Numbered from the stretch's first letter, positions 1-62,839 are shown. The stretch is DNA of 64,000 nt from Mustelus asterias (GCF_964213995.1 NC_135808.1:20522001-20586000), one strand, 5' to 3'. Program-made: numbers and translations. Notes: a model not told the origin generated them from the letters alone.

Positions 1-215
1 TCTGTCCGATTGCTCCCTACTTGGTCCAATGACCCGGCCTCTGTATTCTGGTGTACTGTTAGAAAGCTCACTTCCACCTTGACTGCCCCTGTACCACATG
101 TAGACACCGACTCCACATAACCCTTCCTGCGTGCAGTACAGCACCGCTGTCTCCCCCTCGGTTACATTGAGGGATATCGGGGTTTGAATAACTGCGACCT
201 TCTCAGCACTCGCTG
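1..215 (-). CDS. NCR3: Gene A, second Ig V exon (NCR3/NKp30-like VJ domain), truncated by the window edge
   Basis: Acceptor cttacag at 217-216, phase 1. Translation (A)ASAEKVAVIQTPISLNVTEGETAVLYCTQEGLCGVGVYMWYRGSQGGSELSNSTPEYRGRVIGPSREQSDR. Close paralog of 2170-2508. The symbol denotes family membership, not proven orthology. Confidence 0.8.
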
Positions 216-579
216 CTGTAAGAGAGTAAAATGTTTCACATTGAAGCCAGAAACCCACGCTGCGTTCAGAGGTGTTTGCAAACCCGCTCCTAAATTAAGC
301 ATTGGAATCCCAACGACACAATCCTCAGGAGCGCCTGTCTAAACTCTTCCCTTCTGCAGACATTGGACGACGAAAATGAAATGCTAACTTCTCCATTAGA
401 ATAAAGGAGCAGGACATTTCATTCAGCATTTTACCTTTTGAAGTAAAGAAGTCAAATTCATGATTATTTTACTGAGGTCTGAGGATTCAGGAAACTGAGT
501 TGATTTCATAGAATCATATAGTGGGACAGGAGGCGGCCATTCGGCCCATCGAGTCTGTACCGACCACAAAGAAAAAAGA

Positions 580-1360
580 ACAAAGAAAATTACATCACAG
601 GAACAGACCCTTCGGCTCTTCAAGCCTGCACAGACCACACTGCCTGAACTAAAAGCCCCTACCCTTCCAGGGACCATATCCCTCTATTCCCATCCTATTC
701 ACGTATTTGTCCAGATGTCCCTGTAAACTCACTATCGTATCTGCTTCCACTACCTCCCTCGGCAGCGAGATCCAGGCACCCACCACCCTCTGTTTAAAAA
801 ACATGCCTCGTATATCTCCTTTAAACCTTGCCCCTCGCACCTTAAACCTATGCCCCCTCATAATTGACTCTCCCACCCTGGAAAAAAGCTTCTGACTATC
901 CACTCTGTCCATGCCCCTCATAATCTTGTAGGCTTCTATCAGGTCGCCTCTCAACCTCCGTCATTCCAGTGAGAACAAACCAAGTTTCTCCAACCTCTCC
1001 TCATAGTTAATGCCCTCCATACCAGGCAACATCCTGGTAAATCTTTTCTGTACCCTCTGCAAAGCCTCCACATCTTTCTGGTGGTATGCCGACCAGAATT
1101 GAACACTATATTCCAAGTGCGGCCTAACTAAAGCTCTATAAACCTGCAACATGACTTGCCAATTTTTAAACTCAATGCCCCAGCCGATGAAGGCAAGCAT
1201 GCCATATGTCTTCTTGACTACCTTCTCCACCTGTGTTGCCACTTTCAGTGACCTGTGTACCTGTAGATCCAGATCCCTCTGCCTATCAATACTCTTAAGG
1301 ATTCTGCCATTTACTGTGTATTTCCTATCTGTATTAGACCTTCCAAAACGCATTACCTCA
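580..1360 (-). mobile_element. CR1 LINE 3' fragment
   Basis: ORFs with LVRPHLEYSVQFWS, RVQKRFTRMLPG and RGDLIEAYKIM, plus a CR1-type 3' UTR. Confidence 0.9.
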
Positions 1361-1584
1361 CAGGCCCTATTCCCGTAACCCCACACTTTTACCCTGTCAA
1401 TCCCCTTGATATTTGTGTCAATTTAGCATAGCCAATCAACTTATCGTGCACGTCTTTGGACTGTGGGAGGAAACCGGCGCACCTGGGGAAAACCCACACA
1501 GACACGGGGAGAATGTGCAAACTCCACAGAGGCAGTGACCCGAGGCCAGAATTCAACTTGCGTTCCTGGTGCTATGGAACTCAG

Positions 1585-1768
1585 TCGAGGAGGAGGGGGA
1601 GGAGACGGGAGAAGAGGAGAGGGAGGGGGAAGAGGAGAGGGAGGGGGGGGGAGAGGAGAGGGAGGAGGGGGAGGGGGTGGGGAAGGGTGGCGCGGAGGGG
1701 GAGGGTGGGGGTACGGGGTAGGGGAGGGAGGAACGGGGTAGGGAGAATAGGAGGGGGGAGGGGAGAGT
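1585..1768. repeat. Polypurine (G/A-rich) low-complexity tract
   Basis: About 180 nt of almost only G and A, with many G3-G8 runs. Confidence 0.9.
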
Positions 1769-2169
1769 CCCATGGAATTGTATACAGTTCTTAGCAAGTT
1801 TAATAGATTCAGTGCTGAGGGGTTGCTTGCCCCGTGTGGGGAGCATTGAACCCAGTCACTGGATTTGCACTTCAGGTAACAGTTCAGCTTTGATCTTGTT
1901 TTTGTGGACTCGAAGGACCTGAGAGTCGAATCCTATACCCGTTCCTGTGCTGCCCCAGTGGACATATTTGCACGAATTGAACCATTACAAAGACAGATGT
2001 TGCCAGGCTCTGAGAAGTTAGATGTTCCTTCAATGTCTGCCAATAACCTTGAAGTCTATATCACTATCTTTGCTCTATCTGTTCTGAAGATTACAGCAGG
2101 TAATATGCAAAGCTACTTCACCATGTTGGCTAATTAGTTTCTTAACATAGGAGCGATTAAGAGGCTTAC

Positions 2170-2508
2170 CTGTCACAATCAGTTTTGTTCCTGACCCATA
2201 ATATTCACCCGCGATTATACATCCCACTTTGCAATAATAGGTCGCCGCATCGCTGAATCTTACATTTGTTAACTGAATCGAAGAGATCGTCTTTCCGTCC
2301 GATTCCTCCCTACTTGGTCCAATGACCCGGCCTGCGTATTCTGGTGTACTGTTAGAAAGCTCACTTCCACCTTTACTGTCCCTGTACCACATGAAGACAC
2401 CGACTCCACGTAATCCTTCGAGCGTGCAATATAGCACCGCTATCTCCCCCTCGGTTACATTAAAGGACACCGGGCTTTGAACAATTGTGATCTTCTCAGC
2501 ACTCGCTG
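2170..2508 (-). CDS. NCR3: Gene A, first Ig V exon (NCR3/NKp30-like VJ domain)
   Basis: 339-nt phase 1-1 exon with acceptor ttacag (2510-2509) and donor G|gtaagc. It has the B-strand Cys (LYC), WY, DAATYYC and a J-like YGSGTKLIV. ELSNSTPEYAGRV resembles the NKp30 segment EVRNGTPEFRGRL. Confidence 0.85.
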
Positions 2509-6224: not shown

Positions 6225-6267
6225 CCAAGAGAAGAATCAGGATACAAAGCTCAAGGTTGGAACTCAT
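6225..6267 (-). CDS. Gene A leader (signal peptide) exon, MSSNLELCILILLL
   Basis: ATG at 6267, hydrophobic core, and a phase-1 donor G|gtaagt that joins the V exon in frame (…LLL-AASA-EK). A tandem acceptor acagcag lies just upstream (6277-6273), implying a non-coding first exon. Confidence 0.8.
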
Positions 6268-8400: not shown

Positions 8401-10164
8401 TGGCAAATGATGATGTGACAGGTCTGGCAGTGTAGAAGCCCAGGCTAATGCTCTAATTACTGGAGAAAGGCATAACACGTGTTGAGACAGATAAAATTCG
8501 GACAGTTCTGGACAGACTGTCAGCAGGGGTGCGGTTTCTCTGTTTGGTGGGGGGTCAAGACAAGGGGCCACAGTCTTAGGATACAGGGTAGTCCACTTCA
8601 GGTTGAGATGCGGAGAAATTTCTTCACTTAGAGAGTGTGAACATAAATTCTCTACCGGAGATATCTGTGTAGCCCAATTCATTCAAGATAGTTTACAAGG
8701 AAATGAATAGATTTCTGGACTCAAAGGGCGTCAAGGGCTATGGGAAGAGAGCAGCAATATGGTGTTAATATAGAGGATCGGCCATGATAGCACGAAATTG
8801 CGAAATAGGCTAGGAAGGCCAAGTGGCCTACCGCTGCTCCTAGTTTTGATGTTTAAGTTTAAGTTTATTCATTAGTGTCACAAGTAGGCTTACATTAACA
8901 CTGCAAGCGACTGTGAAAATCCCCTGGTCACCACATTCCGGCATCTGTTCCGGTACACTGAATGAGAATTTAGCATGGCCAATTCGCCTAACCAGCACGT
9001 CTTTTGGACTGGGGTGGGAGGAAACCGGAGCACCCGGAGGAAACCCACATTGACACGGGGAGAATGTGCAGACTCTGCACAGGCAGTGGCCTAAGCCGAG
9101 ATTCGAACCCGTGTCCCTGGCGCTGTGAGGCAGCAGTGCTAGCCACTGTGCCACCGTACCGCTGTGAGGCAGCAGTGCTAATCTCTGTGCCACTGTGCCA
9201 CCATGCCGCCCCATGTTTCAATTACAACCACCATGAAATTTGAGTTAAATGAATTAATAAAAATGTGATTAAAGGCTACTCTCCGCAATGGTGATCGTAA
9301 AAGTTAAAAAGTAAAGTATATTTAATAGTCACAATTAAGGCTTACATACTTACACTGCAATGAAGTTACTGTGAAATTCCTCTCGTCGGCACATTCCCGC
9401 GCCTGTTCGGGTCAATGTACCTAACCAGCACCTCTTTTAGACTGTGGGAGGAAACCGGAGCACCCGGAAAAAACACATGGAGACACGGGCAGAACATGTA
9501 GACTCCGCACAGACAGTGACACAAGCCGGGAATCAAACCCGGGTCCCTGGCACTGTGAGGCAGCAATGTTAACTGCTGTGCCACCGTGCAACCTGGACCC
9601 AGTAACCGGAGAGGAGACAGTCGCACCAAGTCCAGTTGAGTTTGCAAAGTCCTCCATAGTAGCAGCTATCCAAAATTCACAGAGCTCTCCCATGGATTAA
9701 TGAAGCAACGACGTAACATAGTCAGGCACCGTGACTAATTCAAAAAATAAAATGTTCTAATTTCTCCAACACAATTTCTGCTCATGTCCCAGAGGTGGTG
9801 TCATGGTCTTATTCTGCGAGAACTGTGTTACCTTGCCTGTTCCCATCAAGCGGATATCGATTAGTTGGCTCAATGTTCCCAGTCTTGCTGCTTTTGTTTT
9901 TCTTCAGGGATCTGCCGACTGTTCTATTTTCCTTGAATTATTTGTTAAGCTTTAAAACAAACTGATGCTCCGAATTATTTTTTAAGCTTTAAAACAAACT
10001 GATGCTCCAGGCGGCAGTGCGCAGCCGCAGGCTCCAGCAGCAAAGCCACATTCAGTTGCAAACTAAATTTATAAATGCTTCTTCAAGGACGTGCAACGCA
10101 CCGTGGCTTCAGTGACACCGACACCAGCGATCTATCTTCGGGACATACGATACGTGTCACCTAC

Positions 10165-12767: not shown

Positions 12768-12810
12768 ATGAATACAATCCACATCATGTGCATATTAGTT
12801 CCTCTCTCTG
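12768..12810 (+). CDS. Gene B leader (signal peptide) exon, MNTIHIMCILVPLS
   Basis: Acceptor tttcaacag ends at 12739, ATG at 12768, phase-1 donor G|gtgagt. Joins the V exons in frame as …VPLS-GIEA-EMFAV. Confidence 0.8.
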
Positions 12811-13204
12811 GTGAGTATAATCTTCATTTATTCCAGTCTTATATGCAGATCGGCCAAATACTTCCAGCTATCATTTCAAGATACCTTGTCAAGGAGGAGA
12901 CGTTGACGGATTGGCCAGCAATCGGGGATTTACTTTCAATTCATAAAATCTGTAATTGAAACGTGGCCTGGATAATGGTGACCATTAAACTATCATCGAT
13001 TGACATTAGTGAACTTTATAATTAGGATCGGTCTTACCTGGTCTGGCCTACAATCAGATCCGCATTAATGTGGCTGTCTCATATCTATCTACTGATATTG
13101 TTTGAATTGAAGGTTATTTAAGTGTGGGCAATAAATGTTGGTCTTTCCACCAACCCATTTGGTTAAACAAAACTCATCCTTTAGGCTAAATTCAAGCATT
13201 GGAT

Positions 13205-13580
13205 CTTTTTTTCCATTCATTCGTGGGACATGGGTGTTGCTGGCTGGCCAGCATTTATTGCCCATCTGAAATTGCCCTTGTTCAGAGGGCAGTTAAGAGT
13301 CAGCCACATTCCTGTAGCTCTGGAGTTACATGTAGGCCAGACCAGGTAAGGACGGCAGATGTCTTTCCCTAAAGGACATCAGTGAACCAGATGCATTTTT
13401 CTGACAATCGCCAATGGTTTCACAGTTATCAGTAAATGCTTAATTTCAGATATTTCTTTTTGATTGAATTCAAATTCCATCATCTGCCATTGTGGGATTG
13501 GAACCCAGACAGACTAGAACATTAGCTCAGTTTCTGGATTAATAATCTAGCGATAATACCACTAGGCCATCGCCTCCCCT
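13205..13580 (-). mobile_element. Deu-domain (SacSINE1-like) SINE. Related copies at ~6.4, 15.4, 16.6, 39.0, 46.3-47.0 and 50.5-51.2 kb.
   Basis: Repeated core ccatctggttcactaatgtcctttagggaaggaaatctgccgtccttacctggtctggcctacatgtgactccag, tRNA-like head, L2-like tail. The family name is from recollection, not a search. Confidence 0.65.
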
Positions 13581-14904
13581 ATGACAAATATGGGGTACAA
13601 TGCTTTATCTTGTCAGCTTGGATCTTCTTTGTTTCTCTTGTGGGGACCATGAATTGGATTCAATTTGAGTTTGGTTTTTGGAGCAAGCAAGGAGATGGAT
13701 TCGGGTCTGACCAGTCCACTCTACGCAGTGGCTTTGCAACTTAAAAAATGGAGTCAAGCATACTTTGTAAAATACGCTTTTGGTGAAAGCATGAGATCAG
13801 GTAAATGTCTTAACTTGTCAGATTGGACCCAGTATGTTCATTGCCTGGGGAGCATGAATTGGGTTTGATTTGTATTGGTTTTTGGAGCAAGCAAGGAAAA
13901 GTATTAGGCACTTGTCCCATCCACTCTGCACATTGGCTTTGTTATTCTGAGAAAGGAATTGATAATAAAAGAAGTCCCACTCAAAAAAGATTATCTACTC
14001 GGTGAAAGAAACCCTTTAGTCTGCCCGAAACCTGTTTTCCAGTACAAGGAGCTATCCCCGACTGAGTCTATCAGACTGGCACGTTGCAAAGCCCAGGACT
14101 GTGTCCCCAGAGACGCACCAAATCTTCGGGCAACCACCATATAGAGGCAATGAGGGATGGTGACTGTCTACGATCTTTCAGTCAGAGTGCACTGAAGGGA
14201 GGGGAATTGTAAAGACCCCCCTAGGTTTGTATGACTAGAATTGAATGTGTACAGTGAATATTACATGTATCACAATTGTATTGAAACACCTTAGACAGCA
14301 ACTTAATCAATGTAGAAAACATAAATACAAATGCACCACTAGTAATAACCATTTTGAAATGTCTGTAATGTTTCTTTAAGTTATATGGAGGCATCTCAGA
14401 GTGCAACTTACTCTGTGCAGGGAACTTCAATATTATTGCACTTTCCGTGATGCCATTTTGAAATGTCTGTCAGTGTCACAGTGGTTAGTACAGCTGACAG
14501 CGCCAGGGCCCGTGATCAATTCCAGCCTCAGGTGATTGTCTGTGTGGAGTTTGCATGCTCTCCCCGTGTCTTCGTGGGTCTCTTCCGGGTGCTCCAGATT
14601 CGTGCCACAGTTCAAAGATGTGTATGTTGGTGGATTAGCAATGTTAAATTGCCCTAGTTTCCAAGGATGTAAAGATTAGTGAGGTTAAGGGAATGCGATG
14701 GGTGCGGGCCTGGGTTCGACACTCTGTTGGAGAGTCAATGGGCCGAGTGGCCTCCTTCTGCACTGTAGGGATTCTCTGATTTCTTTCAGATATTTTAAGA
14801 ATAAAGTCTATTTTTGCAACCAAATAAATAAAATCCCTGAAAATAATCGTAGTGCTGATAGGCTCATTATCCAGTGACACAGGTTAATGCTCTAAGGACA
14901 TAGA

Positions 14905-15405
14905 AAGGATGTTACGAAACTAGAAAGAGTGCAGAAAAGAGTTACTAGGATGCTACCGGGACTTGATAGATTGAGTTATAAGGAGAGGCTGGATAGACTT
15001 TTTTTTCCCTGGAGCGCAGGAGGCTTAGGAGTAATCTTATAGAGGTCTATAAAATAATGAGGGGCACAGATAAGGGAGATAGTCATCATCTTTTCCCAAA
15101 GGTAGGGGAGTCTAAAACTAGAGGGCATAGGTTTAAGGTGAGAGGGGAGAGATACAAAAGGGTCCAGAGCGGCAGTTCTTTCACTCTGAGGGCAGTGAGT
15201 GTCTGGAATGAGCTGCCAGAGGTAGTAGTAGAGGAGGGTGCAATCTTGTCTTTTAAAAAGCATTTAGACAGTTACATGGTTAAGATGGCTATAGAGAGAT
15301 ATGGGCCAAATGCGGGCAATTGGAACTAGCTTAGTGGTTAAAAACTAGGTGGCATGGACAAGTTGGGCTGAAGGGCCTGTTTCTATGCTGTAAACCTCTA
15401 TGACA
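14905..15405 (+). mobile_element. CR1 LINE 3' fragment (the same subfamily occurs at ~30310-30840 and ~60865-61362)
   Basis: LFPKVGESKTRGHRFKVRGERYK shared among the three copies. Confidence 0.88.
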
Positions 15406-15866
15406 CGGTTTCTAATCCCACCATCAGCTTTTGCACTAGGAATTCAATTAATAAAATCTGAAATATGAAGCTAGTCTCAGTAATGGTGACCAGGAGCCTA
15501 TGATGGACTGTTGCATAAACCCATCTGTCTCACTAATGTGATTTGGCGAAAGACATCTGGCATCCTTATGCGGCCTGGTCTGCATGTTAATCTTAATGTG
15601 GCTAACCCTTCACAGCCCTCTAAAATGTCCCAGGGCAATTAGGGACAAGCAACAAATGCGGGCATTGACAGTGATGCCCCATTGCCCATGAAAAAATTAA
15701 AAAAACATTGTCCAGTTTCCAGTTGTCCTTAATTCCTTGCAGTGGTTGCGAGTTGGTTCACTGAATCCAGTTGTACAATTAGGAAAATGTTGAGATATTT
15801 ACTTACTGGACTGACTGTCAAAGCCACAACCTCAAAACAAGTAACCTGACGTTTTCTCGTTTGCAG

Positions 15867-16208
15867 GAATTGAAGCTGAGATGTTCGCAGTTGTACAAAA
15901 GCTGCCCACTATTCTGGCTGAGGAAGGGCAGACAGTGCTCCTGCCCTGTGACTACACAGCCAACGTCTCCAAGGCGATAGGCTCTTATAGCTGGTACAGA
16001 GACACGAGGAATGGAACTGAAGTTTCCAACGGGACAGCTTCATACAGAGGGCGGATCTACAGGACCAGTGAGGATTTTGGGAGTGCCGGAGACGCCTCCA
16101 TTCTCATCAAGAATGCGACAGTGAAGGATTCTGGGGTGTACTACTGTGAAGTGGTGATGATGCAACTGGGTGCGGAATATGGTGCAGGAACACATCTCAT
16201 CGTGAAAA
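15867..16208 (+). CDS. NCR3: Gene B Ig V exon 1 (NCR3/NKp30-like VJ domain)
   Basis: 342-nt phase 1-1 exon, acceptor tttgcag, weak donor A|gtacgc. LPC..AIGS..WYRD..GTEVSNGT..RGR..DSGVYYC..LG..YGAGTHLIV follows the NKp30 pattern (LPC, AIGS, WFRD, EVRNGT, RGR, LGVGTGNGTRLVV). Confidence 0.88.
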
Positions 16209-17361
16209 GTACGCCATTCGGCTGCATGCATTGACACGAGACATTCGACCCTTTAGTGCTGTGGCCTTATCACCGACCGAACCTCGGCCAGAAGCATTTA
16301 GAAGAGCAGTCGAAAAGTCAAAGCATACTTGACTAGGAAGCAAATGCAGCTAAATTAGATTAAAATCAATATGTGCTTGATGGCCAGCGCAGATACGCTG
16401 GGCCAAATGGCCTCTTGCTGTGCTGTAATGCTCCACGAGGCGATCATTCTAATAGCTTTGATGCAGCAAATCCAGATTGTGAAATTCGAAAGTAGTTGAG
16501 GCCAATTTCAAGAAGAAATATAGATATAGCTCTTGGGACTAAAGGGATCAAGGGATATGGAGGCAAGGCGGAATCAGGATGTTGAATTTGATGATCAGCC
16601 ATGATCATGAAATGCGTTGGGAGGTAATGGTGGTATTATTGCCAGAAACTCAGCTAATGTTCTGGGGACGCGGGTTCAAATCCCACCATGGCAGCTGGTG
16701 AAATTTGAATTCAATAAAAAATATCTCGAATTAAGGATCTACAGATCACCATGGAACCATTGTTGATTGTCGGAAAAACCCATCTGGTTCACTAATAGCC
16801 TTTAGGGAAAGAAATCTCCTGTCCTTACTCGGTCTGGCCTACAGAGCCACAGCAATGTGGTTGACTGTCAACTGCCCACTGAAATGGCCGTGTAAGCTAC
16901 TCAGTTCAAGGGCAACTAGGGATGGGCAATCAATGCTGACTGGCCAGCAATGTCCCTGTTCCACAACTGAATAAAAATAAGAAATGGCGGAACAGGCTCG
17001 AAGATCCAAATGGCCCACTCCAGCTTCTATTTCCTTTGTTCCTAATTCTCAACTCCATTGAAGATAAATTTTAATCATTTAAAATATTCAAGTTCTGTCT
17101 CGGAGTAAATCTGACTTGCTGAGGATTCAAAACAAGAGGATAGCTTTACCACCAGTAATACCTTTGATACTCTCCACTTACCTGGATGAGTGTAGCTCCA
17201 ACAAGACTCAAAAAATTCTACCATCCAGGACAAAGCAACCCACTTAATTGGCACCCCATCCACCATCTTCAACATCCATTCATCCACCAATGATGCACAG
17301 TGGCAGCCATGTGTACCATCGACCAGATGCACTGCAGCAACTCATCAAAGCTCCTTGCAAA

Positions 17362-17715
17362 AGGGCGGCACGGTAGCACAGTGGTTAGCACTGCTGCTTC
17401 ACAGCTCCAGGGTCCCGGGTTCGATTCCCGGCTCGGGTCACTGTCTGTGTTGAGTTTGCACATTCTCCTCGTGTCTGTGTGGGTTTCCTCCGGGTGCTCC
17501 GGTTTCCTCCCACAGTCCAAAGATATGCGGGTTAGGTTGATTGGCCAGGTTAAAAAAAAAAATTGCCCCTTAGTGTCCTGAGATGCGTAGGTTAGAGGGA
17601 TTAGTGGGAAAATATGTGGGGGTAGGGCCTGGGTGGGACTGCGGTCGGTGCAGACTCGATGGGCCGAATGGCCTCCTTCTGCACTGTAGGGCTTCTGTGA
17701 AATTTCTTCTATGAA
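17362..17715 (+). mobile_element. HE1-type SINE inserted into an older L2-like LINE fragment (~17165-18020)
   Basis: Full SINE head to tail. The flanks match the uninterrupted copy of the LINE 3' end at ~19460-19890. Confidence 0.8.
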
Positions 17716-18181
17716 ACCCGTGACTTATCTTCTAACAGCTAGAAGGACAAGGGCAGCAGAGATGTGGGAACACCACCTACTGATGTTTCTCTGCCAGTCA
17801 CTCACCACCCTGAATGGAAAGATATCACTGTTCCTTCACTGTCACTTAGGGCAAAATCCCAGAACTCGCTCCCTCACAGCACTGCGGCTGTACATCCATC
17901 TAATTGACTCCAGAGGTTCAAAAAGGCAAGTCACCACCACCTTCTCTATGGCAATTAGGGATGGGCTAGAAAATGCTGGCCTGGCCAGCGAGGACCACAT
18001 TGCCCATGACAGAATTTAAAGATGCTACAATGTTTAGTTGCTCATAATGCCTTCCACTTTTTCCAAAGTGGTTCATTGAATATGGCTGTACAATTAGGGA
18101 GACGTTGAGATATTTACTCACTGGACTGACTGTCAAAGCCACAACCTCAAAACAAGTCACCTGAACTTTTCCTCTTTGCAG

Positions 18182-18523
18182 GAATTGAAGCTGAGATGTT
18201 CGCAGTTGTTCAAAGGTTGCCCTCTATTCTTGCTGAGGAAGGGCAGACAGTGCTCCTGCCCTGTGACTACACGACTGGCATCTCCAAGGCGATAAGCTCT
18301 TATAGCTGGTACAGAGATGTGAGGAATGGAACTAAAGTTACCAATGGGACAGCTTCATACAGAGGGCGGATCTACAGGACCAGTGAGCATTTTGGGAGTG
18401 CCGGAGACGCCTCCATTCTCATCAAGGATGTAAGAGTGAAGGATTCCGGAGTGTATTACTGTGAAGTGGCGATGATGCAGCTGGGTGTGGAATATGGTGC
18501 AGGAACACTTCTCATTGTGAGAA
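18182..18523 (+). CDS. NCR3: Gene B Ig V exon 2 (NCR3/NKp30-like VJ domain)
   Basis: 342-nt phase 1-1 exon, acceptor tttgcag, donor A|gtaagt. 17 amino-acid differences from V exon 1 over about 109 residues (hand count). Confidence 0.9.
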
Positions 18524-21488: not shown

Positions 21489-21575
21489 GTTCAATGATAA
21501 TCACAGTTCAGCGTATTGTCAGAGGGCTGGTTATTGTGACAGTGATCATTGCTATTTCCTTCTGGAGAATGAGGG
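21489..21575 (+). CDS. Gene B transmembrane exon (S)SMIITVQRIVRGLVIVTVIIAISFWRMR
   Basis: Acceptor ttctcctttag, donor G|gtgaga, phase 1-1. Hydrophobic helix with two Arg, followed by a WRMR stop-transfer. Confidence 0.8.
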
Positions 21576-23780: not shown

Positions 23781-23924
23781 TTGCCCACATGCAGACTATG
23801 GAAAAATGAACGATCAAGGTGGAGCGACAGACCCCGGGACACACGTGTCCAGGCGGAGGTTGACCCGGACAGCTTCAAAGTTGTTGATGTTGAGTTTGAG
23901 TGTTCTGAAGAATTCAGAACCTGA
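23781..23924 (+). CDS. Gene B terminal coding exon LPTCRLWKNERSRWSDRPRDTRVQAEVDPDSFKVVDVEFECSEEFRT*
   Basis: Acceptor tttgtttgtgcag, phase 0, 47 open codons, TGA at 23922-23924. Non-repetitive sequence. Confidence 0.6.
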   Translation: MPTCRLWKNERSRWSDRPRDTRVQAEVDPDSFKVVDVEFECSEEFRT

Positions 23925-37055: not shown

Positions 37056-37093
37056 ACCGGAGCTACAATTCAGGTACCCACCCCCCTGCTGAA

Positions 37094-43943: not shown

Positions 43944-44027
43944 TTAACATTGAAAATTGGTTTCCAGATCTTCATTTGCACATCCATCGACCTCTGCAGC
44001 TGACGGCTCAGAATCTGCTCCATTTCC
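43944..44027 (-). CDS. Gene C terminal coding exon GNGADSEPSAAEVDGCANEDLETNFQC*
   Basis: Acceptor ttaatctccgcag (44029-44028), phase 0, TAA ending at 43944. Confidence 0.6.
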   Translation of the reverse strand, partial: GNGADSEPSAAEVDGCANEDLETNFQC

Positions 44028-45567: not shown

Positions 45568-45608
45568 CTGATTCACTGAGATGTCTTCAGGAAGCGGACC
45601 ACGTTTCG
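45568..45608 (-). CDS. Gene C cytoplasmic exon (A)KRGPLPEDISVNQ
   Basis: Acceptor attcacag, donor CAG|gtaagg. 41 nt, phase 1-0. Confidence 0.68.
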
Positions 45609-48534: not shown

Positions 48535-48569
48535 CTGTTACATTAAGTTCGTCGTATCCATAATCATGC
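48535..48569 (-). CDS. Gene C cytoplasmic exon (E)HDYGYDELNVT
   Basis: Acceptor ttttttctttggcag, donor CAG|gtaaat. 35 nt; only the phase 2-1 frame is open; contains YxxL. Confidence 0.7.
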
Positions 48570-51531: not shown

Positions 51532-51629
51532 TCTGAATCGTTACGTCCCACAATCACATTCAGAGAAGATACTTGTTGTAAAAGATCCATCTTTATCGTG
51601 GCGTATTGTACAGGCTCTGGTGCAGTAGT
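51532..51629 (-). CDS. Gene C cytoplasmic exon TTAPEPVQYATIKMDLLQQVSSLNVIVGRNDS, containing an ITIM consensus
   Basis: Acceptor ctttctgtttatacag, donor GA|gtgagt. 98 nt, phase 0-2. VQYATI fits (I/V/L/S)xYxx(L/V/I). Confidence 0.7.
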
Positions 51630-52691: not shown

Positions 52692-55600
52692 CTACAAGTT
52701 CAAAATGTAACGGATAGGAAAATGTCAGTGGAGTTTAATACAATAAGGTGTAGCACAATATTCAGAGCGATAGATTGATGTTTGATGTCAGATAATTCGA
52801 TAGATAGAAAAACATTTATTTGAGCTACATTTCAGCCGTTTAATGACAGAACAGAGGAGTGGAATGGACTGTTTTTGTCTCTGTTTCTATAATGTCTAAT
52901 CGTGCCTCTCAGTGTCTCCTATATTATACTAATAGGGTTAATAAACTTGAATGAATTATTAGTAAGAATGATAAAACAACCCGGTTCCAGAAAAAAATCA
53001 GATAAGTTACCAATTTGTCAAAACTGTATATTTGTGTACGTGGGTGTGTTTCATTCAATGGCTCCAGACAGGGTGCTGACATAACTAACCCCTTGCTATT
53101 TTATCAAGAACTCATGCAGTTCATCTGGACAAGCAGACATGGCTGGGGAATTTGGCAATGTGGTGCTCCCCCGTCACTGCAGCAAAGCACAATTATCTAA
53201 TGAACTTTCAAAGTAGGACTCCGCATTGTTTCACTTTGGAAACAAGAGCATCAACAGTCGAGTCGAAGGGACACAAGACAGACAGACACCTATTTCTACA
53301 AAGTCCGACTGAGATTCACTAGAAACCAGCAATTGCTGGATTACATTTTGAAAGCTTAAGGGTGAACATCATAGAATCCCTGCAGTGCAGAAGGAGGCCA
53401 TCTGGCCCATCGAGTGGGCAGTGACTCGCACAGCATCATACCCAGGCCCTATCCCCATAACCCCTCATACTTACCTGGCTACTCACCCTAACCTATGCAT
53501 CTTAGGACACTAAGGGGCAATTTACCATGGCCAGTCATCAACCTAACTTGTTCATCTTTGGATTGTGGGAAACCGGAGTACCTGGAGGAAGCCCACGCAG
53601 ACATGAGGACACAGACAGTGACCCGAGGCTGGAATTGAACCCGGGTCCCTGGCACTGTGAGGCAGCAGTGCTAACCACTGTGAAATCAAATAGCAAGTGC
53701 AGCAGTCTAATACACTCATAATTAGCGTTCACCGGTGATCAAGCTACATCTATTAAATTGTCACAAGCCTCTGGAGGCAGCATTCACCAGAAACTACACA
53801 TAAAGACAGATAAGATTTTTATAACTCTGGAACAACTGTATGCTCGGGATAAATAAGGATGCTTCTGTCATTTGCATCCAGTGTCAGAAGTAATATGGGC
53901 CTAATGTAGATCTGCAGCAAACATCTGCAGGTGGCACGGTGCCACAATGTTTAGCACTGCTGCCTCACAGCGTCAGGGATCCACGTTTGATTCCCAGCTT
54001 GGGTTACTGTCTGTGTGGAGTTTGCACATTCTCCCCGTGTCTGCTTGGGTTTCCTCCGGGTGCTCCGGTTTCCCCCCACAGTCCAACGATGTGTGGGTTA
54101 GGTTGATTGGCCAATGCTAAATTGACCGGAGTCGGGGATTAGCAGGGCAAATGAGTGTTATGGGAATAGGGCCTGGGTGGGATTATGGTCAGTACAGACT
54201 CAATGGGCCGAATGGCCTCCTTTTGTACGATAGGGATTCTATGATCGTCATTGTAACAGTGCCATTTCTCAGAATTGATATTTCCTCAGAGGAAAAGTGG
54301 GGTGGGGGGGGGGGGGGGGGGGGGCTTATAAAAATGTTGCCAGGGCTAAATAAAGTGTAGCTTTGAGGAGAATTGGATAGGTTTGCGTTATTTTCCTTGG
54401 AACAAAGAAGGCTGAGGAGTGATTTGATAGAGGTGTATAAAGTTATGAGGGGTAGAGACAGAGTGGACAGAATATTTTTTTTCCCTTGGCAAAGAATTCT
54501 AGAGTAAGAAGTTTAACAACACCAGGTTACAGTCCAACGGGTTTATTTGGTAACAAAAGCAAAAGCGTGTGGCTTTTGCTCCCAAATAAACCTGTTGGAC
54601 TTTAACCTGGTGTGGTTAAACTTCTTACTGTGTTTACCCCAGTCCAATGCCGGCATTTCCACATAAAGAATTCTAGAACCAGGGGACATGGATTCAAGAT
54701 AAGTGGCAGTAGGTGCAGAGGGGACATGAGGAAGAACTTTTTATGCAGAGGGTGGTGGGTGTCTGGAATTTGCTGCCCAAGTTGGGGGTGGAGGCAGAGA
54801 CCCTAAAGACTTTGAAAAAGTACATGGATCTGCACCTTAAGTGCTGTAAGATACAGGATTATGGGCAGGGTGCGGGATGGTGGGATTGGAAAGAGAATCA
54901 GAGTGTCTGCAGGCTGGCATGGACAAAATGGGCCGAATGGTCTCCTTCTGTACTGTAACTGTTCTATGTTTCTATGGAAATTGCCGATGTCAAAGTTGTT
55001 ACTGAGTAATTTCCTGCTGTGGGCCAGACACATTAGAGATTGAATTGAGGGCCCTTCAAACTACTTTCACATTTAGACTGGGCAATGGGGAGAATCTCGC
55101 CTCATCTCCCTGCGCCTGACTTAAATCAAGACAGCAGATACAAGTGGCATCATAAGTTCCCTTCTATTCTCTCTCAGGACAGCTACACTTTACTGTTCAC
55201 TGTAACTCAATGAGTGACTTTCTCTAATCGCCGTGTTTGAACCTTTTGGCGCCCAGCCTCACTTCAGCCCAAAATCCAGACTGGGGAGAGTGCTGCACTG
55301 CGCATGGTTGGAGATGTCATCTTTCAGCTGACCATGATTGTTGTAAAAGAACTCTTGGACCTATTCCGAAACAGCAACATAGAAACAAGAAACATAGAAA
55401 ATAAGAAGAGGCCCTTCGAGCCTGCTCCACAATTCATTTTGATCATGGCCGATGATGAAATTCAAGATCCTGATCCTGCTTTCCCCCGGTATTCTTTGAT
55501 CCCTTCAGCTTCAAGAGCTGTATCTAATTTTTTCTCATTGTTAGTGTAGTGATGAGTATCCCTGCTTGTCACACGGTCCACCGGGGTTCAATTTCTTTAT

Positions 55601-56883
55601 CGCAATTTTAAGATGACAACATTTTTGGGGTGGCACGGTGGTTGGCACAGCTGCTTCACAGCGCCAGGGACCCAGGTTCAATTGTGGCCTTGGGTCACTG
55701 TCTGTGCAGAGTCTGCACATTCTCCCTGTGTCTGAGTGGGTTTCCTGCGGGTGCTCTGGTTTCCTCCCAGAGTCCAAAGAAGTGCGGGTTAGGTTTATTG
55801 TCCATGCTCAATTGAACCTAGTGTCAGGGGGATTAGCAGGGTAAATATGTGGGGTTATGGGAATAGGGGCTGGGTGGGATTGTGGTCAGTGCATGGCTTC
55901 CTTCTGTACTGCAGGGATCTATGATTCTCGAAATCACGCAAAGTTTTGGTCTCAACTACTTTCTCTGGGAGTGCATTCCACAAATTTACCACTCTCTGGG
56001 TGAAGAAATTTCTCCTCACCTCAGTTCTAAAAGGTTTACCCCTCATCCTCAAACTTGACCCCTCATTCTGGACTCCCCCACCATTGGGAACATTCTTTCT
56101 GAATCTACCCTGTCCAATCCTGTTAGAATCTTTCTAAGTTTCTATGAAGTCCCCTCACTCTTCTAAACACCAACACGGTGGCACAGTGGTTAGCACTGCA
56201 GCCTCACTGCGCCAGGGTCCCAGGTTCAATTCCAGCCTCAGGTTACTGTCTGTGTGGTGTTTACACGTCCTCCCCGTGTCTGCATGGGTTTCCTCCGAGT
56301 TCTCCAGTTCCCTCCCACAGTCCAAAGATGTATGGGTCAGGTTGATTGGCCATGCCAAATTGCCCCTTAGTGTCAGGGAGATAGCAGGGTAAATGTGTGC
56401 GGTTATGGGAACAGGGCCTGTTGGTACAGATTCGATGGGCCGAATGGCCTTCTTCTGTACTCTAGGGATTCTATAATTACTGACCTAGTCTCTCCTCATG
56501 TGAACAGCAGAGTTTGCAACCAAAATCACCAAATTATATCACTATCACGTTGCTTTTGATGGGACCATGCACAAATTAGTGTTGCTTAGCTGTGTCAACG
56601 TTTACACTGTAACAGGTTTTCCTCGGCTGCAAAGCACTCTTTGGCCTCCTATGGTTATGTGAGGCACCAGATTGATGTATTTTGCTGACACTGGAGCAGA
56701 ACCTTATCATAACACTGATACTTGAGAACTTATTAAAAAATACCTATTTCCAAATGGTCTCCCGCCAGCTGATAATAAATAGAAATCCTCGCATACAAAA
56801 TGCATACTTGTAATACTTCCAATGAACACAATCTGTCACTAGCCGTGTCAAATATTTAAATTCATTCTTATTGAGTTACTTGC

Positions 56884-56951
56884 CAATCAGGTTATCTGTC
56901 GAACTGCTGAATGTCTTCAGATTGTCAGGAGGGGGAGGAGGAAATAAAGTC
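56884..56951 (-). CDS. Gene C cytoplasmic exon (R)TLFPPPPPDNLKTFSSSTDNLI
   Basis: Acceptor tgtttataacacag, non-canonical donor TG|gcaagt. 68 nt, phase 2-1, which is exactly what the flanking exons require. Confidence 0.58.
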
Positions 56952-59255: not shown

Positions 59256-59422
59256 CTATACAGCACGGAAACAGGGAATTATCCCTCTCAACCTTTCCTA
59301 ACTATGTACTTGTCCAAATTTAAATGTTGTAATTGTACTGCCATATTTAATGGCAGTACACTGAATTTACAGTGATAGCAGCAAGCTAACTGTAAATGTA
59401 ACAGGTTTCTGGCTAAATGTAC

Positions 59423-59463
59423 CTTTCCATGGGCGTGTAGATCGATTGATCTTGGTTTGTATC
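59423..59463 (-). CDS. Gene C cytoplasmic exon DTNQDQSIYTPME
   Basis: Acceptor tttatttgtttcccccag, donor AAG|gtacat. 41 nt, phase 0-2; contains YxxM. Confidence 0.68.
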
Positions 59464-62400
59464 CTGGGGGAAACAAATAAAGCTTTATCAGTGAATATTC
59501 GAATGAAGTGTAATACAATCACACGCAAAGTGAAACATATTTCGGGACTATACGCAAGGGATCATGTTCAAGTAGATTTCCATCTTTAACTTGTCATAAA
59601 GTCAAATATTTATCCAAGGAGATAATTATTTATATAGACCAACACATTCTAATATATTAAAGGAAGAATTCCCCGATGACCTACCACGGGATAAATCATA
59701 ACACACACCCACACACACTCTGTCTATATTTCCCACTGCCTCAGAAAAGCAGCCAGCATAATTAAGGACCCCACACACCTCGGACATTCTCTCTTCCACC
59801 TTCTTCCGTCGGGAAAAAGATACGAAAGTCTGGTGTCACGTACCAACCGACTCAAGAACAGCTTCTTCCCTGCTGCTGTCAGACTTTTGAATGGACCGAC
59901 CTCGCATTAAGTTGATCTTTCTCTGCACCCTAGCTATGACTGTAACACTACATTCTGCACTCTCTCGTTTCCTTCTCTATGAACGGTATGTTTTGTCTGT
60001 ATAGCACGCAAGAAACTATACTTTTCACTGTAGGCTAATACATGTGACAATAATAAATCAAATCTCTCTCACACACCCATTTAGATGCAAACACACATAT
60101 ACTCTCAGATATATGCACAATAGCATTGTACAGTGTGTTATTGGCAGCTATCTTCAGATTGCTTTAAAAAAAAGCACTTGAAGAGTCATCCAGACTCGAA
60201 ACGTTGGCTCTGTTCTCTCTCCACAGATGCTGTCAGACCTGCTGAGATTTTCCAGCATTTTTTGTTTTTGTTTGTGGCACCGAAACGGTGTTGGATGGCT
60301 GAGTCCCGAACATAACTTTATTAAAATGTGACATCAGAGAAATTAATCTCACTATCTTTAACTTGTTACTAAATGACAGGAAATGAAGCAAATGTTCCTA
60401 TTATGTTTAACACTTTATGACACATAGTGAAAAAATCCCTTTGGCACCAATGTTCACATTCACCAAATATCCAACAGATTGGGACTACAGGAGTCTCCTC
60501 ACCATGCTGACATCACCAACACACTCGCACCAGATGAACCAATCTCACTATGTTGACAATTTCCTGTTACATGCAGAAATTTAATTCGACGGTGACTATT
60601 AATTCCTGCATATGACTGAAAACAGCAGAAATGTCAAGATAGCAGACTTTGGGATGTATGATTTAATTAATATGGATCAATGAAAAATAACATGTTCAGT
60701 TGTTCCTGACTGCGGATTTAACACTCACTAAAGCAGGAGCGCTAATACCAGCTTGCTATTGCAAGGTGCTGGGAGTTCTTGTAACTACATCTAAACAAGA
60801 CTAAATCATATCCTTTCCACCGTTTGCCAGTGGGGTCTGTTATGGATATAATGGCTTTTTTTATATTAAACTAAAAAGAGTGCAGAAAAGATTTATTAGG
60901 ATGCTACCGAGTCTTAATGGTTTGAGTCATAAGGAGAGGCTGGATAGACTGGGACTCTTTTCACTGGAGCATAGAAGACTTAGGGGTGATCTTATAGAGG
61001 TCTATAAAATAATGAGAGGCATAGGTCAACTAGATAGTCAACATCTTTTCCCAAAAGTAGGGGAATCTAAAACTAGAGGGCATAGATTTAAGGTGAGAGG
61101 GGAGAGATACAAAAGGGTCCAGAGGGGCAATTTTTTCACACAGAGGATGGTGGGTGTCAGGAACAAGCTGCCAGAGATAGTAGTAGAGGTGGGTACAATT
61201 TTGCCTTTTAAAAAGCGTTTAGACAGTTACATGGGTAAGATGGGTAGAGAGGGATATGGGCCAAATGCGGGCAATTGGGACTAGCTTAGTGGTTTAAAAA
61301 AGGGCGGCATGGACATGTTGGGCCGAAGGGCCTGTTTCCATGGTAAACCTCTATGACTCTATTTATGAATGATGGCCGTGTTTGCTGTGGCTATTTGACA
61401 TCAGCTGAATAGATAAAAATGATAATGGCTGGATTTTGCAGATGTGGAAATGGTGTGGGTCACCACCTTGACAGCTGCCCTCAGAGTTCCTTTACATGGA
61501 CTATAAGTGTGCCGACGTCTTCTGATGTGGCTTCAGATAGAATGAGGCGTCACCTTGTGGGTGCCCTGTGTCATCTGTGAACAGGGCTGAGAACAGTGGG
61601 ACTTGTCAATCCATCAGATTGAAGACTCCTCACTGGCACACAGCGGAGTAACAATTCGTCTTGGGAAGTATAACAAAGTGGGCAATATCAGATTCCTGAT
61701 TGATGATATACTGCACCAGAATGGACGGCAATAGAACTGAATATCAGTTACTGACTATAGTGGATTTAAACAGCCATCTGCGATGGAGTTGTATCCCAGA
61801 GTGTAAACCACGATTCACAGACCATGGAGTACAAATTAGACTTAAATCCTCAACACAAAGTGAAATACGGATAGAATATTACACCTACATTTTCAAATCT
61901 GATACTCATTGTTAGCACTGCTGCCTCACAGCACCAGGGACCTGGGTTCGATTCCGGCCTCTGGTCACAGTCTGCGTGGAGTTTGCACGTGCTCCCCATG
62001 TTTGTGTGGGTTTCCTCTGGGTGCTCCGGTTTCCCCCCATACTCCAAAAATGTGCGGATTAGGTTGATTGGCCATGATAAATTGCCCCTCAGTGACAGGG
62101 GGACTAGAAGGGTAAATATGTGGGATTACGGGGATGGGACCTGGGTAGGATTATTATCGGTGCAGGCTTGATGGGCCGATTGGCCTACTCTGCAGTGTAG
62201 GGATTCTATGATTCTACGAATTAGTTGCCCAGTGCTTTGGAAATATCTCAGTCGGTGCAGACTCAATGGGCCAAATGGCCTCCTTCTGCACTGTTGATTC
62301 TATGATTGAGAGAATGAGGCTTTGCACTTGCGAGATTGATTTCTTTTCTACAGCCAGATAGGTTATTGCTCATTGATTTTCATTCTGTTAATAAGTCACA

Positions 62401-62798
62401 CACGTCTATATACACCAGCTCTAATTAATTCTGGCTCCTTAGGGGGATTAGTTAGGATGTAATTCAGGTTTGAGGGGTTGTCTCCCTCTCAGTGCCAAGA
62501 GTTTGGCAAGGGCAGCACCAGCAGACTGTACAGGGGAATGGGTTATATCAGACAACAGAATCTCAGTTTTCAGAATGAACAGCAGACACCAAGCATTGTG
62601 GTAGGTTTACTGTCAGCCTCAGTTATTCTAGTCATAAAAACTGACCCATGTTCTGTATAGGTATTCGTTCTCAGTCCAATTATACCTGTGTCTAATCTGT
62701 GATTTCATAAAGGGGATAGTGTGGATTTATTGTTCCAAACCTATACTGGGTATGTGAAGTTGAAATAATGCAATTTGTTTTCTAATTAGGTTACTTAC

Positions 62799-62839
62799 CA
62801 GATCTTGCTCCATCTCATCTGGAGGTGACGTTATGTTGT
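62799..62839 (-). CDS. Gene C most 5' exon identified in the window, (x)NITSPPDEMEQDL
   Basis: Branch point and acceptor ctaacttgttttgcag, donor CTG|gtaagt. 41 nt, phase 1-0. The upstream exons are presumably beyond 64000. Confidence 0.68.

What the first reader, a model, noticed from the sequence alone, without database searches (positions are those of the whole stretch)
1..62839. Candidate paired activating/inhibitory receptor system built on NKp30-like VJ domains
Gene B has a TM Arg and a tail with no Tyr. This is the established signature of adaptor-dependent activating receptors; mammalian NKp30 pairs with CD3zeta/FcRgamma through a TM Arg. Its convergent neighbour, gene C, carries an ITIM-consensus tail and shares exon geometry with gene B. 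Mammalian NCR3 is a single gene without an ITIM, and sharks are known to have an expanded MHC-linked NCR3 family. A KIR/NITR-style paired arrangement within that family would be notable. The pairing is inferred because gene C's ectodomain is outside the window.
Basis: partly seen in the sequence, partly recalled or inferred. Interest (0 to 1): 0.8.

Follow-up and report, generated by a model that had tools for sequence, protein, structure and literature searches.

The report
Neighbouring NKp30-like activating and inhibitory receptors
In a shark-like fish genome, an immune-receptor gene with an NKp30-like binding domain and an activating-type membrane anchor lies next to the tail of a related gene that carries inhibitory tyrosine motifs, a usual layout for natural-killer-type receptor families.

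Summary
The observation largely holds. Gene B (+, 12768-23924) has a leader, two tandem germline-joined VJ exons whose best solved relative is NKp30 (E 7e-16), and a transmembrane exon with Arg in the same place as in NCR3 proteins. Its short tail has no Tyr under the stronger acceptor.

Gene C (-, 62839-43944) is a chain of at least seven small exons with canonical splice sites. They carry YxxM, an ITIM (VQYATI) and YDEL. One linking exon is unresolved.

Gene C's transmembrane and ectodomain exons lie outside the window. However, its tail is homologous to tails that in 6 of 6 shark and ray proteins follow one to three NKp30-like VJ domains. All 6 keep the three Tyr motifs.

Gene B's V domains group with an Arg-TM protein of Cetorhinus, inside a clade of ITIM-tailed shark receptors. 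So the "paired" reading is supported at family level, not for this pair directly.

Glu, Gln or His sits at one mid-membrane position in 5 of 5 gene-C-type relatives that have a TM. "Shared exon geometry" was not confirmed.

No RNA data were available, and the key shark NCR3 paper could not be read. The scan has noted similar loci elsewhere in this genome. Verdict: a new member of a known kind, of moderate interest.

The parts
12768..12810 (+). Gene B leader exon (MNTIHIMCILVPLS plus first base of a split Gly codon; donor gtgagt, phase 1)
   Evidence: scan for ATG, hydrophobic core and phase-1 donor; sequence. Resembles the leaders of P0014 and P0003 (MNTSPILWILAVFSG, MNISAILWILAVFLG).
15867..16208 (+). 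Gene B V exon 1: germline-joined VJ domain, phase 1-1, 342 nt
   Evidence: Pfam V-set E 1.2e-15. 72% identical to the Cetorhinus P0004 V domain.
18182..18523 (+). Gene B V exon 2: tandem duplicate of V exon 1 (about 91% nt, 85% aa), phase 1-1, donor gtaagt
   Evidence: Best PDB relatives are NCR3, E 7e-16.
21489..21575 (+). Gene B transmembrane exon with Arg (…VQRIVRGLVIV…), phase 1-1
   Evidence: tblastn to the P0004 TM, E 0.001. Arg sits in the same position as in NCR3 and NCR3-like proteins of horse, frogs, sturgeon, bichir and Chiloscyllium.
23781..23924 (+). Gene B tail exon. In phase from the TM exon it reads 9 residues then stop at 23807-23809. A different frame, open to 23921, resembles the Cetorhinus tail.
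   Evidence: tblastn to the P0004 tail, E 5e-5.
62799..62839 (-). Gene C cytoplasmic exon (NITSPPDEMEQDL), phase 1-0; first gene C exon inside the window
   Evidence: Aligns with EDNITS… of Carcharodon P0153.
59423..59463 (-). Gene C exon with YxxM motif (DTNQDQSIYTPME), phase 0-2
   Evidence: The motif is kept in 6 of 6 homologous tails.
56880..56951 (-). Gene C exon (…PPDNLKTFSSSTDNLIG), phase 2-2
   Evidence: LKTF.NS is kept in 5 of 6 homologues; Heterodontus reads VKEFNHS.
53131..53176 (-). Best candidate for the missing phase 2-0 linking exon of gene C (unique sequence; CQIPQP resembles CQIPPP of Stegostoma P0155 at that position). Weak donor; not established.
51532..51629 (-). Gene C ITIM exon (TTAPEPVQYATIKMDLLQQVSSLNVIVGRNDS), phase 0-2, donor gtgagt
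   Evidence: (E 1.5e-7, 73.5% to Scyliorhinus P0003). The ITIM is kept in 6 of 6. Unique in the window.
48535..48569 (-). Gene C exon with second Tyr motif (HDYGYDELNVT), phase 2-1
   Evidence: (92% to P0155, E 8e-4).
45568..45608 (-). Gene C exon (KRGPLPEDISVNQ), phase 1-0
43944..44027 (-). Gene C last coding exon (GNGADSEPSAAEVDGCANEDLETNFQC, stop)
   Evidence: (E 9.9e-6, 67% to P0003).
59555..59587 (-). Relic or alternative cassette (KDGNLLEHDPL). It is homologous to a cassette present in some isoforms or species, but its phases do not fit the neighbouring exons here.
   Evidence: Heterodontus P0151 has it and P0006 lacks it.
6225..6267 (-). Gene A leader exon (MSSNLELCILILLL, donor gtaagt, phase 1)
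   Evidence: Resembles the P0104 leader.
2170..2508 (-). Gene A V exon 1 (VJ domain, phase 1-1)
   Evidence: Falls in a 100* clade with P0104, P0141 and P0032.
1..215 (-). Gene A V exon 2, cut by the window start (89% nt identical to V exon 1 over 215 nt)

Best explanation
The window is a piece of an expanded cluster of NKp30-like (NCR3-family) receptor genes of an elasmobranch. The cluster is broken up by LINE and SINE insertions. Gene B encodes a type I receptor with two tandem germline-joined VJ domains, almost no stalk, and a transmembrane helix with Arg in the position that NKp30 has it. Its cytoplasmic end is very short and has no signalling motif. By analogy with NKp30 (inferred, not shown) it would need an acidic-TM ITAM adaptor of the CD3zeta/FcRgamma kind to signal. 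Gene C is convergent and ends 20 kb away. What lies in the window is the 3' half of a gene of the other kind. Its long, multi-exon cytoplasmic tail carries SIYTPM (YxxM), VQYATI (ITIM) and, about 29 residues after the ITIM Tyr, YDEL. That spacing is typical of tails that dock the tandem SH2 domains of SHP-1/2 (inferred). In other sharks and a ray this same tail follows one to three NKp30-like VJ domains and a TM helix with Glu, Gln or His at mid-membrane. So the locus holds an activating-type and an inhibitory or co-inhibitory-type member of one V-domain family side by side. Shown: sequence anatomy, homology and conservation of the motifs. Inferred: adaptor use, phosphatase recruitment, a shared ligand, and that gene C's own ectodomain is NKp30-like.
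For: V domains: Pfam V-set; the 4 best PDB matches of gene B V2 are all NCR3. Horse NCR3 (P0082) and proteins that sources name NCR3 or NCR3-like are among the hits of the representative search. These come from bullfrog, Leptobrachium, sturgeons, Stegostoma, Heterodontus and Chiloscyllium punctatum. Gene B model: five exons with canonical splice sites and matching phases. Its TM and tail exons match Cetorhinus P0004, a 213-aa protein with one V domain, the TM motif HIVRG and a Tyr-free tail. Arg sits in the same position in the TM of P0082/P0165, P0087, P0136, P0005, P0020, P0026, P0032 and the sturgeon proteins. Gene C: seven exons lie in the order of the homologous proteins. All have AG/GT and consecutive compatible phases except for one missing link. 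YxxM, ITIM and YxEL are kept in 6 of 6 homologous tails from 6 species, including a ray. All six proteins have NKp30-like V domains. Tree of 72 V domains: winB_V1, winB_V2 and P0004 group at 99*, inside a clade whose other classified rows are all ITIM-tailed. Gene A's V falls in a 100* clade holding two ITIM-tailed proteins and one Arg-TM protein. Holding all shark Arg-TM V domains as one clade is rejected (AU p 1e-7). Homologues of both kinds lie on the same large contig in Heterodontus (P0001, P0006, P0011, P0141, P0097) and in Chiloscyllium plagiosum (P0014, P0032).
Against: Gene C's TM and V exons are not in the window, so similarity of the B and C ectodomains in this genome is unknown. 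One gene C exon is missing from the model, so the in-frame link to the ITIM exon is not shown. Gene B's tail exon is out of frame relative to its Cetorhinus relative, and a second acceptor would give a tail with one Tyr. Gene B might therefore be decaying or differently spliced. In the V tree the shark clades are separated from tetrapod NCR3 only by weakly supported branches (78), so orthology to NCR3 proper is open. The AU group was named after the tree had been seen. The gene-C-type tail has a YxxM motif and its TM is polar or charged, which does not fit a plain inhibitory partner.
Confidence: 0.65

Rival explanations
1. Gene B and gene C are merely neighbours in a large, heterogeneous multigene family. 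They do not see the same ligand and do not work as a functional activating/inhibitory pair. "Paired" would then describe the family only, not these two genes.
For: Gene C's ectodomain is unseen. Gene B's nearest V relative is another Arg-TM protein (P0004, 99*), not an ITIM-tailed one, which suggests an old separate lineage. Many such loci are noted across more than 13 Mb of the same sequence piece (unchecked notes). Gene A, the other neighbour, belongs to a different V subfamily.
Against: Path lengths from gene B's V to ITIM-tailed V domains of Heterodontus are short (0.42-0.50, against 0.30 to P0004), and all lie in one clade. Adjacency of the two kinds recurs in other sharks at contig level.
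Confidence: 0.22
2. Gene B is a decaying or non-functional copy. Its tail exon has shifted frame relative to the Cetorhinus relative, it has almost no stalk, and its two V exons differ without the excess of third-position (mostly silent) changes that purifying selection leaves.
For: The frame resembling the P0004 tail cannot be reached in phase. The 32 differences between the V exons are spread evenly over codon positions, 11/9/12. There is no expression evidence.
Against: All five exons are open with canonical splice sites and matching phases. An early stop after the TM still leaves a complete activating-type receptor, since such receptors need no tail. An even spread of changes also fits diversifying selection on a ligand-binding domain. 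The similarity of the tail frames may only reflect DNA similarity.
Confidence: 0.1
3. Gene C's tail belongs to a receptor whose ectodomain is not NKp30-like (for example CD28-family, G6b-like or SIRP-like), as in the reader's own refutation case.
For: The ectodomain is outside the window. Automatic names of some relatives are SIRP-beta-like, PTPNS1-like or pIgR-like.
Against: All six proteins carrying the homologous tail have VJ domains that fall in the same clade as gene B's. One Heterodontus isoform model (P0152) joins the leader straight to the tail, without V or TM. The passages I read of PMC11599192 describe CD28H-type V domains by an E-I-P or PPP motif in CDR3. I did not see such a motif in these V sequences (read by eye). 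The automatic names are similarity labels, not tests.
Confidence: 0.04

Closest known systems
Mammalian NKp30 (NCR3)
   Same: Single-exon, non-rearranging VJ-type V domain. It is the best solved-structure relative of gene B. Arg lies in the outer part of the TM helix, and the cytoplasmic end is short with no signalling motif.
   Different: Gene B has two tandem V exons and almost no stalk. It is one of many copies rather than a single gene. Its neighbours carry ITIM tails, which mammalian NCR3 lacks (recalled). Orthology is not resolved by the tree. MHC linkage and B7H6 binding are untested.
Nurse shark NCR3 family (Kinlein et al. 2021, Immunogenetics 73:333; eight subtypes, MHC-linked, as I recall its abstract)
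   Same: Expanded, divergent family of NKp30-like VJ receptors in an elasmobranch.
   Different: I could not read the paper (not held); I saw only its reference entries. Whether it already describes Arg-TM and ITIM forms is therefore unknown to me. This is the main uncertainty in the novelty rating.
Paired activating/inhibitory receptor families (KIR, LILR, SIRP, PILR, teleost NITR)
   Same: Related V-type ectodomains are combined either with a basic TM residue and short tail or with ITIM tails. The genes are clustered, and tail type switches repeatedly across the V-domain tree.
   Different: The ITIM-type members here have a polar or acidic mid-TM residue and an extra YxxM motif. Their tail is split over many small exons. 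Ectodomains may hold one to five tandem VJ domains.
Co-inhibitory receptors with two spaced Tyr motifs (PD-1, BTLA, PECAM-1; recalled)
   Same: An ITIM is followed 25-30 residues later by a second Yxx[LIV] motif. As in BTLA, a further Tyr motif of another kind sits upstream.
   Different: There is no sequence homology of the tail to any named family (best Atlas score 0.82, below the tool's 0.9 lead level). The second motif (YDEL) is not a canonical ITSM.

Membership tests
NKp30 / NCR3 family | Non-rearranging V domain with V and J parts in one exon | tested here: met
   Gene B exons 15867-16208 and 18182-18523, and gene A exon 2508-2170, each run from the leader junction through YG.GT.L.V to a phase-1 donor.
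NKp30 / NCR3 family | V domain closer to NKp30 than to other V-set families | tested here: met
   Gene B V2: the 4 best PDB sequences are all NCR3 at E 7e-16, and the next is 7e-11. Gene A V1: not specific, with NCR3, SIRP and antibody V all within 1e-13 to 1e-10.
NKp30 / NCR3 family | Arg in the transmembrane helix with a short tail lacking signalling motifs | tested here: met
   Gene B TM exon. The position is shared with horse NCR3 P0082 and NCR3-like proteins of frogs, sturgeon and bichir. The tail has no Tyr under the stronger acceptor.
NKp30 / NCR3 family | Orthology to NCR3 in a gene tree | tested here: inconclusive
   The shark clades and the tetrapod NCR3 clades are joined only through branches with support 78. 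The alignment has 115 columns, which is few.
NKp30 / NCR3 family | Linkage to the MHC (class III region) | not testable with these tools
NKp30 / NCR3 family | Binding of B7H6-type ligands; association with CD3zeta/FcRgamma | not testable with these tools
   This needs protein experiments.
Paired activating/inhibitory receptor system | One member with a basic TM residue and no signalling tail | tested here: met
   Gene B.
Paired activating/inhibitory receptor system | Another member with a conserved ITIM in the tail | tested here: met
   Gene C has VQYATI. [IV]xYxx[IL] is kept in 6 of 6 homologous tails. The in-frame link across one unresolved exon is not shown.
Paired activating/inhibitory receptor system | Closely similar ectodomains in the two members | tested here: inconclusive
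   Gene C's ectodomain is outside the window. Across species, the V domains of both kinds share one clade, with paths of 0.42-0.50 from gene B to ITIM-tailed V domains.
Paired activating/inhibitory receptor system | Genes clustered in one locus | tested here: met
   B and C are convergent, with coding ends 20 kb apart. Gene A lies head-to-head with B, their leaders 6.5 kb apart.
ITIM-bearing inhibitory receptors | Uncharged TM helix | tested here: not met
   Relatives of gene C have Glu (3), Gln (1) or His (1) at one mid-TM column, in 5 of 5 aligned proteins with a TM. Gene C's own TM was not seen. An unchecked note, s1-892496, reports a mid-TM Glu 9.7 kb beyond the window.
ITIM-bearing inhibitory receptors | Recruitment of SHP-1/2 or SHIP on phosphorylation | not testable with these tools
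   Inferred only from the motifs and their spacing of about 29 residues.

The most novel reading that the evidence does not exclude
The Arg-TM, tail-less chains (gene B type) and the Glu-TM chains with the long Tyr-motif tail (gene C type) are not opposing receptors. Instead they are partners: they assemble through a membrane Arg-Glu pair into one receptor, in which the gene C type is the signalling subunit. This would be a germline VJ-domain forerunner of the way TCR chains pair with acidic-TM CD3 chains. The conserved polar mid-TM residue in an ITIM-bearing receptor would then have a reason, and so would the side-by-side layout of the two kinds.
Probability: 0.05. Interest if true: 0.8.

Novelty: new member of a known kind. 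Interest (0 to 1): 0.4.

Why it matters
NKp30 is, as I recall the literature, the one natural-killer receptor traceable from sharks to humans. Its VJ domain is also often discussed as a relative of the domain that gave rise to antigen receptors. Suppose the shark family regularly comes as Arg-TM and ITIM-tailed versions with closely related V domains, and the tail motifs are kept between sharks and a ray. Then the activating/inhibitory logic of NK receptor families would be as old as jawed vertebrates within this single family. The single activating NCR3 of mammals would be a remnant. The locus also gives concrete constructs for testing adaptor use, phosphatase recruitment and B7H6-type ligand binding in a cartilaginous fish. 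The value is tempered. The pattern is visible in public gene models of several sharks, it may already be described in a paper I could not read, and nothing here shows expression or function.

Tried and rejected
(1) A leader just upstream of V exon 1 (ATG near 15788): rejected. The intron would be about 25 nt, and the same sequence without the ATG precedes V exon 2, so it is part of the duplicated intron. The leader at 12768-12810 fits the homologues.

(2) A 13-nt micro-exon at 53487-53475 as the missing gene C link: rejected, because it lies in a dispersed repeat with more than 15 copies in the window. An upstream acceptor at 51681 would also restore the frame, but it adds 17 residues with no counterpart in relatives. 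I kept it only as an alternative.

(3) Relic ITIM-tail exons downstream of gene B: the tblastn hits of the tails on the + strand were chance-level. The best two (E 0.40 and 4.6) lie at 34.9-36.5 kb, inside the LINE ORFs.

(4) The 8-residue match ATPYCIKL at 52754-52731 to the post-TM segment of P0153: E 1.2 with stops on both sides, so I treat it as chance.

(5) ESM Atlas search with the gene-C-type tail (P0153 residues 296-440): best score 0.82, no named family.

(6) The word-index searches found few relatives (4, 1 and 4 proteins), and none from this genome. Gene C's own full protein was therefore not recovered.

(7) Literature: Kinlein et al. 2021 and Flajnik et al. 2012 are not held. Six full-text searches found no paper in the library that describes ITIM or Arg-TM forms of shark NKp30. 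That says little, because the two key papers are outside the library. I read passages only of PMC12227049, PMC10450919, PMC12272517, PMC11999971, PMC11302387 and PMC11599192. Supplements were not opened. Those of PMC11599192 may hold alignments relevant to excluding the CD28 family.

Exons were compared one by one, and they were added to the alignment as separate rows.

Full report
WHAT IS IN THE WINDOW

The 64-kb window has about 41-50% G+C and no N. It is crowded with retroelement ORFs (reverse transcriptase fragments, and a nearly full-length LINE at 34.2-38.2 kb) and with many copies of one SINE-like repeat. Among them are three complete Ig V exons and one cut by the window start. Two lie on the - strand at 2508-2170 and 215-1 (gene A). 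All three complete exons hit Pfam V-set (E 1.2e-15, 9.5e-15, 2.5e-9). Each contains the J-like YG.GT.L.V stretch within the same exon, so they are germline-joined VJ domains.

For gene B V2, the four best of 825 matching PDB sequences are all NKp30/NCR3 (E 6.5e-16 to 8.9e-16). The next hit is 7.3e-11. Gene A's V is less specific: antibody V, SIRP and NCR3 all fall within 1e-13 to 1e-10.

GENE B MODEL

A scan for ATG, a hydrophobic core and a phase-1 donor gives one leader that resembles the homologues' leaders, at 12768-12810. Both V exons are 342 nt and phase 1-1, with good acceptors. The donors are gtacgc for V1 and gtaagt for V2.

The two V exons are about 91% identical in DNA and 85% in protein. 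The duplication includes about 165 nt of upstream intron (aligned from 15702). The 32 differences fall evenly on the three codon positions (11/9/12).

The next exon, 21489-21575, is phase 1-1 and encodes SSMIITVQRIVRGLVIVTVIIAISFWRMR. The stalk is therefore only a few residues long, and two Arg lie in the outer part of the helix.

A search of 1.84 billion representative proteins with V2 gave 880 hits at E up to 0.001. The best single-V hit is P0004, from Cetorhinus maximus: 213 aa and 70% identical. It has the same TM motif (…HIVRGVIIITMIIAIFFWRIR) and a 51-residue Tyr-free tail. By tblastn, its TM matches 21512-21574 (E 0.001) and its tail matches 23793-23897 (E 5e-5).

The tail exon has a strong acceptor at 23780|23781. 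Read in phase from the TM exon, it gives nine residues and a stop, with no Tyr. The frame that resembles P0004 (47 residues, no Tyr) cannot be reached in phase. A second AG 14 nt further on would give 46 residues with one Tyr.

The Arg position is shared by several other proteins:
- horse NCR3 (P0082);
- proteins that sources name NCR3 or NCR3-like, from bullfrog, Leptobrachium and sturgeons;
- unnamed relatives of Bombina, Mixophyes and Polypterus;
- Chiloscyllium plagiosum P0032.

GENE C

Proteins P0003 (Scyliorhinus canicula), P0006/P0151 (Heterodontus francisci) and P0009 (Mobula hypostoma) came from the V search. P0153/P0154 (Carcharodon carcharias) and P0155 (Stegostoma tigrinum) came from the tail search, and P0164 (Chiloscyllium punctatum) from a cluster look-up. 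All carry a long tail that matches, in order, a chain of small exons on the minus strand:
- 62839-62799
- 59463-59423
- 56951-56880
- 51629-51532
- 48569-48535
- 45608-45568
- 44027-43944

Every exon has AG and GT at its borders. The phases run 1-0, 0-2, 2-2, then 0-2, 2-1, 1-0 and 0-stop. So one exon of phase 2-0 is missing between 56880 and 51629. The best candidate is 53176-53131: it is unique sequence with a good acceptor and a weak donor, and it carries a CQIPQP stretch like CQIPPP of Stegostoma at that place. A micro-exon candidate fell inside a repeat and was rejected.

The exons carry SIYTPM (YxxM), VQYATI (ITIM consensus) and YGYDEL. The ITIM exon is 73.5% identical to Scyliorhinus (E 1.5e-7), and the last exon is 67% identical (E 9.9e-6). 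In an alignment of the six homologous tails, the window's exons were added as separate rows. All three Tyr motifs are kept in 6 of 6 tails. The distance from the ITIM Tyr to the YDEL Tyr is about 29 residues.

IS GENE C AN NKp30-LIKE RECEPTOR?

The indirect evidence is consistent. All six proteins with the homologous tail have one to three VJ domains in front of it. One Heterodontus isoform model, P0152, joins the leader straight to the tail. In a tree of 72 V domains, these VJ domains share a clade with gene B's. Before building that tree I dropped 14 of 83 database domains, as isoforms, near-identical cluster members or short rows, and I left out the partial gene A V2.

In that tree winB_V1, winB_V2 and Cetorhinus P0004 group at 99*. 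They sit inside a 15-row clade whose other classified rows are all ITIM-tailed. Gene A's V sits in a separate 100* clade with two ITIM-tailed proteins (P0104 of Carcharodon, P0141 of Heterodontus, the latter named NCR3-like by NCBI) and one Arg-TM protein (P0032). The labels need at least three switches on starred branches. Forcing all shark Arg-TM V domains into one clade costs 76 log-likelihood units (AU p 1e-7), although the group was named after the tree had been seen. Both kinds of tail therefore occur in at least two V subfamilies.

WHAT DOES NOT FIT A PLAIN INHIBITORY PARTNER

At one mid-helix column, the five aligned gene-C-type proteins that have a TM show Glu (3), Gln (1) or His (1). 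Other relatives show Glu (P0001) or Asn (P0014) at what looks by eye like the same place. An unchecked note of this scan reports a mid-TM Glu 9.7 kb beyond the window end. That could be gene C's TM exon, but I could not look. The tail also has a YxxM motif. It is only half met: the ITIM is conserved.

MECHANISM (inferred from established knowledge of NKp30, ITIM receptors and tandem-SH2 phosphatases, all recalled)

Gene B would need an acidic-TM ITAM adaptor. Gene C's tail would, when phosphorylated, dock SHP-1/2 through the ITIM and the second Tyr motif, and possibly p85 through YxxM. A bolder reading that I cannot exclude is that the Arg-TM and Glu-TM chains pair with each other.

WHAT COULD NOT BE DONE

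- No RNA run was listed for this sequence; three runs of one study, of unknown kind, hold it.
I left that place out of everything afterwards, so splicing and expression remain unchecked.
- The two papers most likely to bear on novelty, Kinlein et al. 2021 and Flajnik et al. 2012, are not held. I know them only from reference entries and from memory of their abstracts.

COMPARISON AND VERDICT

Gene B meets the testable defining features of an NKp30-type receptor: a single-exon VJ domain, NKp30 as nearest solved relative, a TM Arg and a short tail. Orthology, MHC linkage and ligand remain open. Together with gene C's tail, the locus has the anatomy of a paired activating/inhibitory family. That anatomy is shared by public gene models of at least seven other elasmobranch species. 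By the scan's own unchecked notes, it is also shared by many other loci of this genome (23 notes). I therefore rate it a new member of a known kind and of moderate interest. The conserved polar mid-TM residue of the ITIM-tailed type is the one feature that deserves a closer look.

Noticed in passing
window 34210-38247 (-): Near full-length LINE-like retroelement. ORFs of 188 and 209 aa are followed by a 689-aa ORF and a 276-aa ORF that overlap by 55 nt. By eye these look like the endonuclease/reverse-transcriptase part and the reverse-transcriptase C-terminal part. It sits between the ends of genes B and C.
   Followed up: no
window, many places, e.g. 8840-9214, 9366-9647, 17300-17581, 26772-27056, 27992-28276, 38599-38919, 53440-53520: A SINE-like repeat that translates to …GTVAQWLALLPHSARD.GS.PGLGHCLC… occurs more than 15 times in both orientations. 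It produces spurious ORFs and spurious exon candidates.
   Followed up: partly
window 59587-59555 (-): KDGNLLEHDPL is homologous to a cassette (…NLLESDPLC…) found in Heterodontus P0151 and P0001, Stegostoma and C. punctatum. The cassette is absent from Heterodontus isoform P0006, Scyliorhinus and Carcharodon. Here its splice phases do not fit the neighbouring exons, so it looks like a relic or needs other exons.
   Followed up: partly
window 21576-21620 (+): If the donor of gene B's TM exon is not used, read-through adds 15 residues and a stop, including SKYINV, which fits the ITIM consensus. It is a curiosity only. As I recall, human NKp30 isoforms differ in their tails through alternative splicing.
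   Followed up: no
window 23781-23924 (+): Gene B's tail exon resembles the Cetorhinus P0004 tail in a frame that cannot be reached in phase from the TM exon. This could be a one-base shift between species near the acceptor, or a mis-modelled P0004.
   Followed up: partly
window 15867-16208 versus 18182-18523 (+): The 32 nucleotide differences between gene B's two V exons are spread 11/9/12 over the codon positions. The amino-acid changes appear (by eye) clustered in a few short stretches, which may correspond to CDR1, C'-C'', the D-E turn and CDR3. This is compatible with diversifying selection or relaxed constraint.
   Followed up: partly
window 2508-2170 and 215-1 (-); 15702-16228 and 18017-18543 (+): In both gene A and gene B the V exon was duplicated in tandem together with upstream intron sequence: about 165 nt in gene B and about 50 nt seen by eye in gene A. 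Relatives in other species have up to five tandem VJ domains (Mobula P0002).
   Followed up: partly
protein P0026 cluster (Polypterus senegalus): The 90% cluster of an Arg-TM NKp30-like bichir protein also holds a 596-aa model named "PRC2A protein, partial". In humans PRRC2A is a class III MHC gene close to NCR3 (recalled), so this hints at conserved linkage in a basal ray-finned fish.
   Followed up: no
window 52754-52731 (-): ATPYCIKL matches the segment just after the TM helix of Carcharodon P0153 (7 of 8 residues). It has stops on both sides and lies out of order within gene C. It is probably chance (E 1.2).
   Followed up: partly
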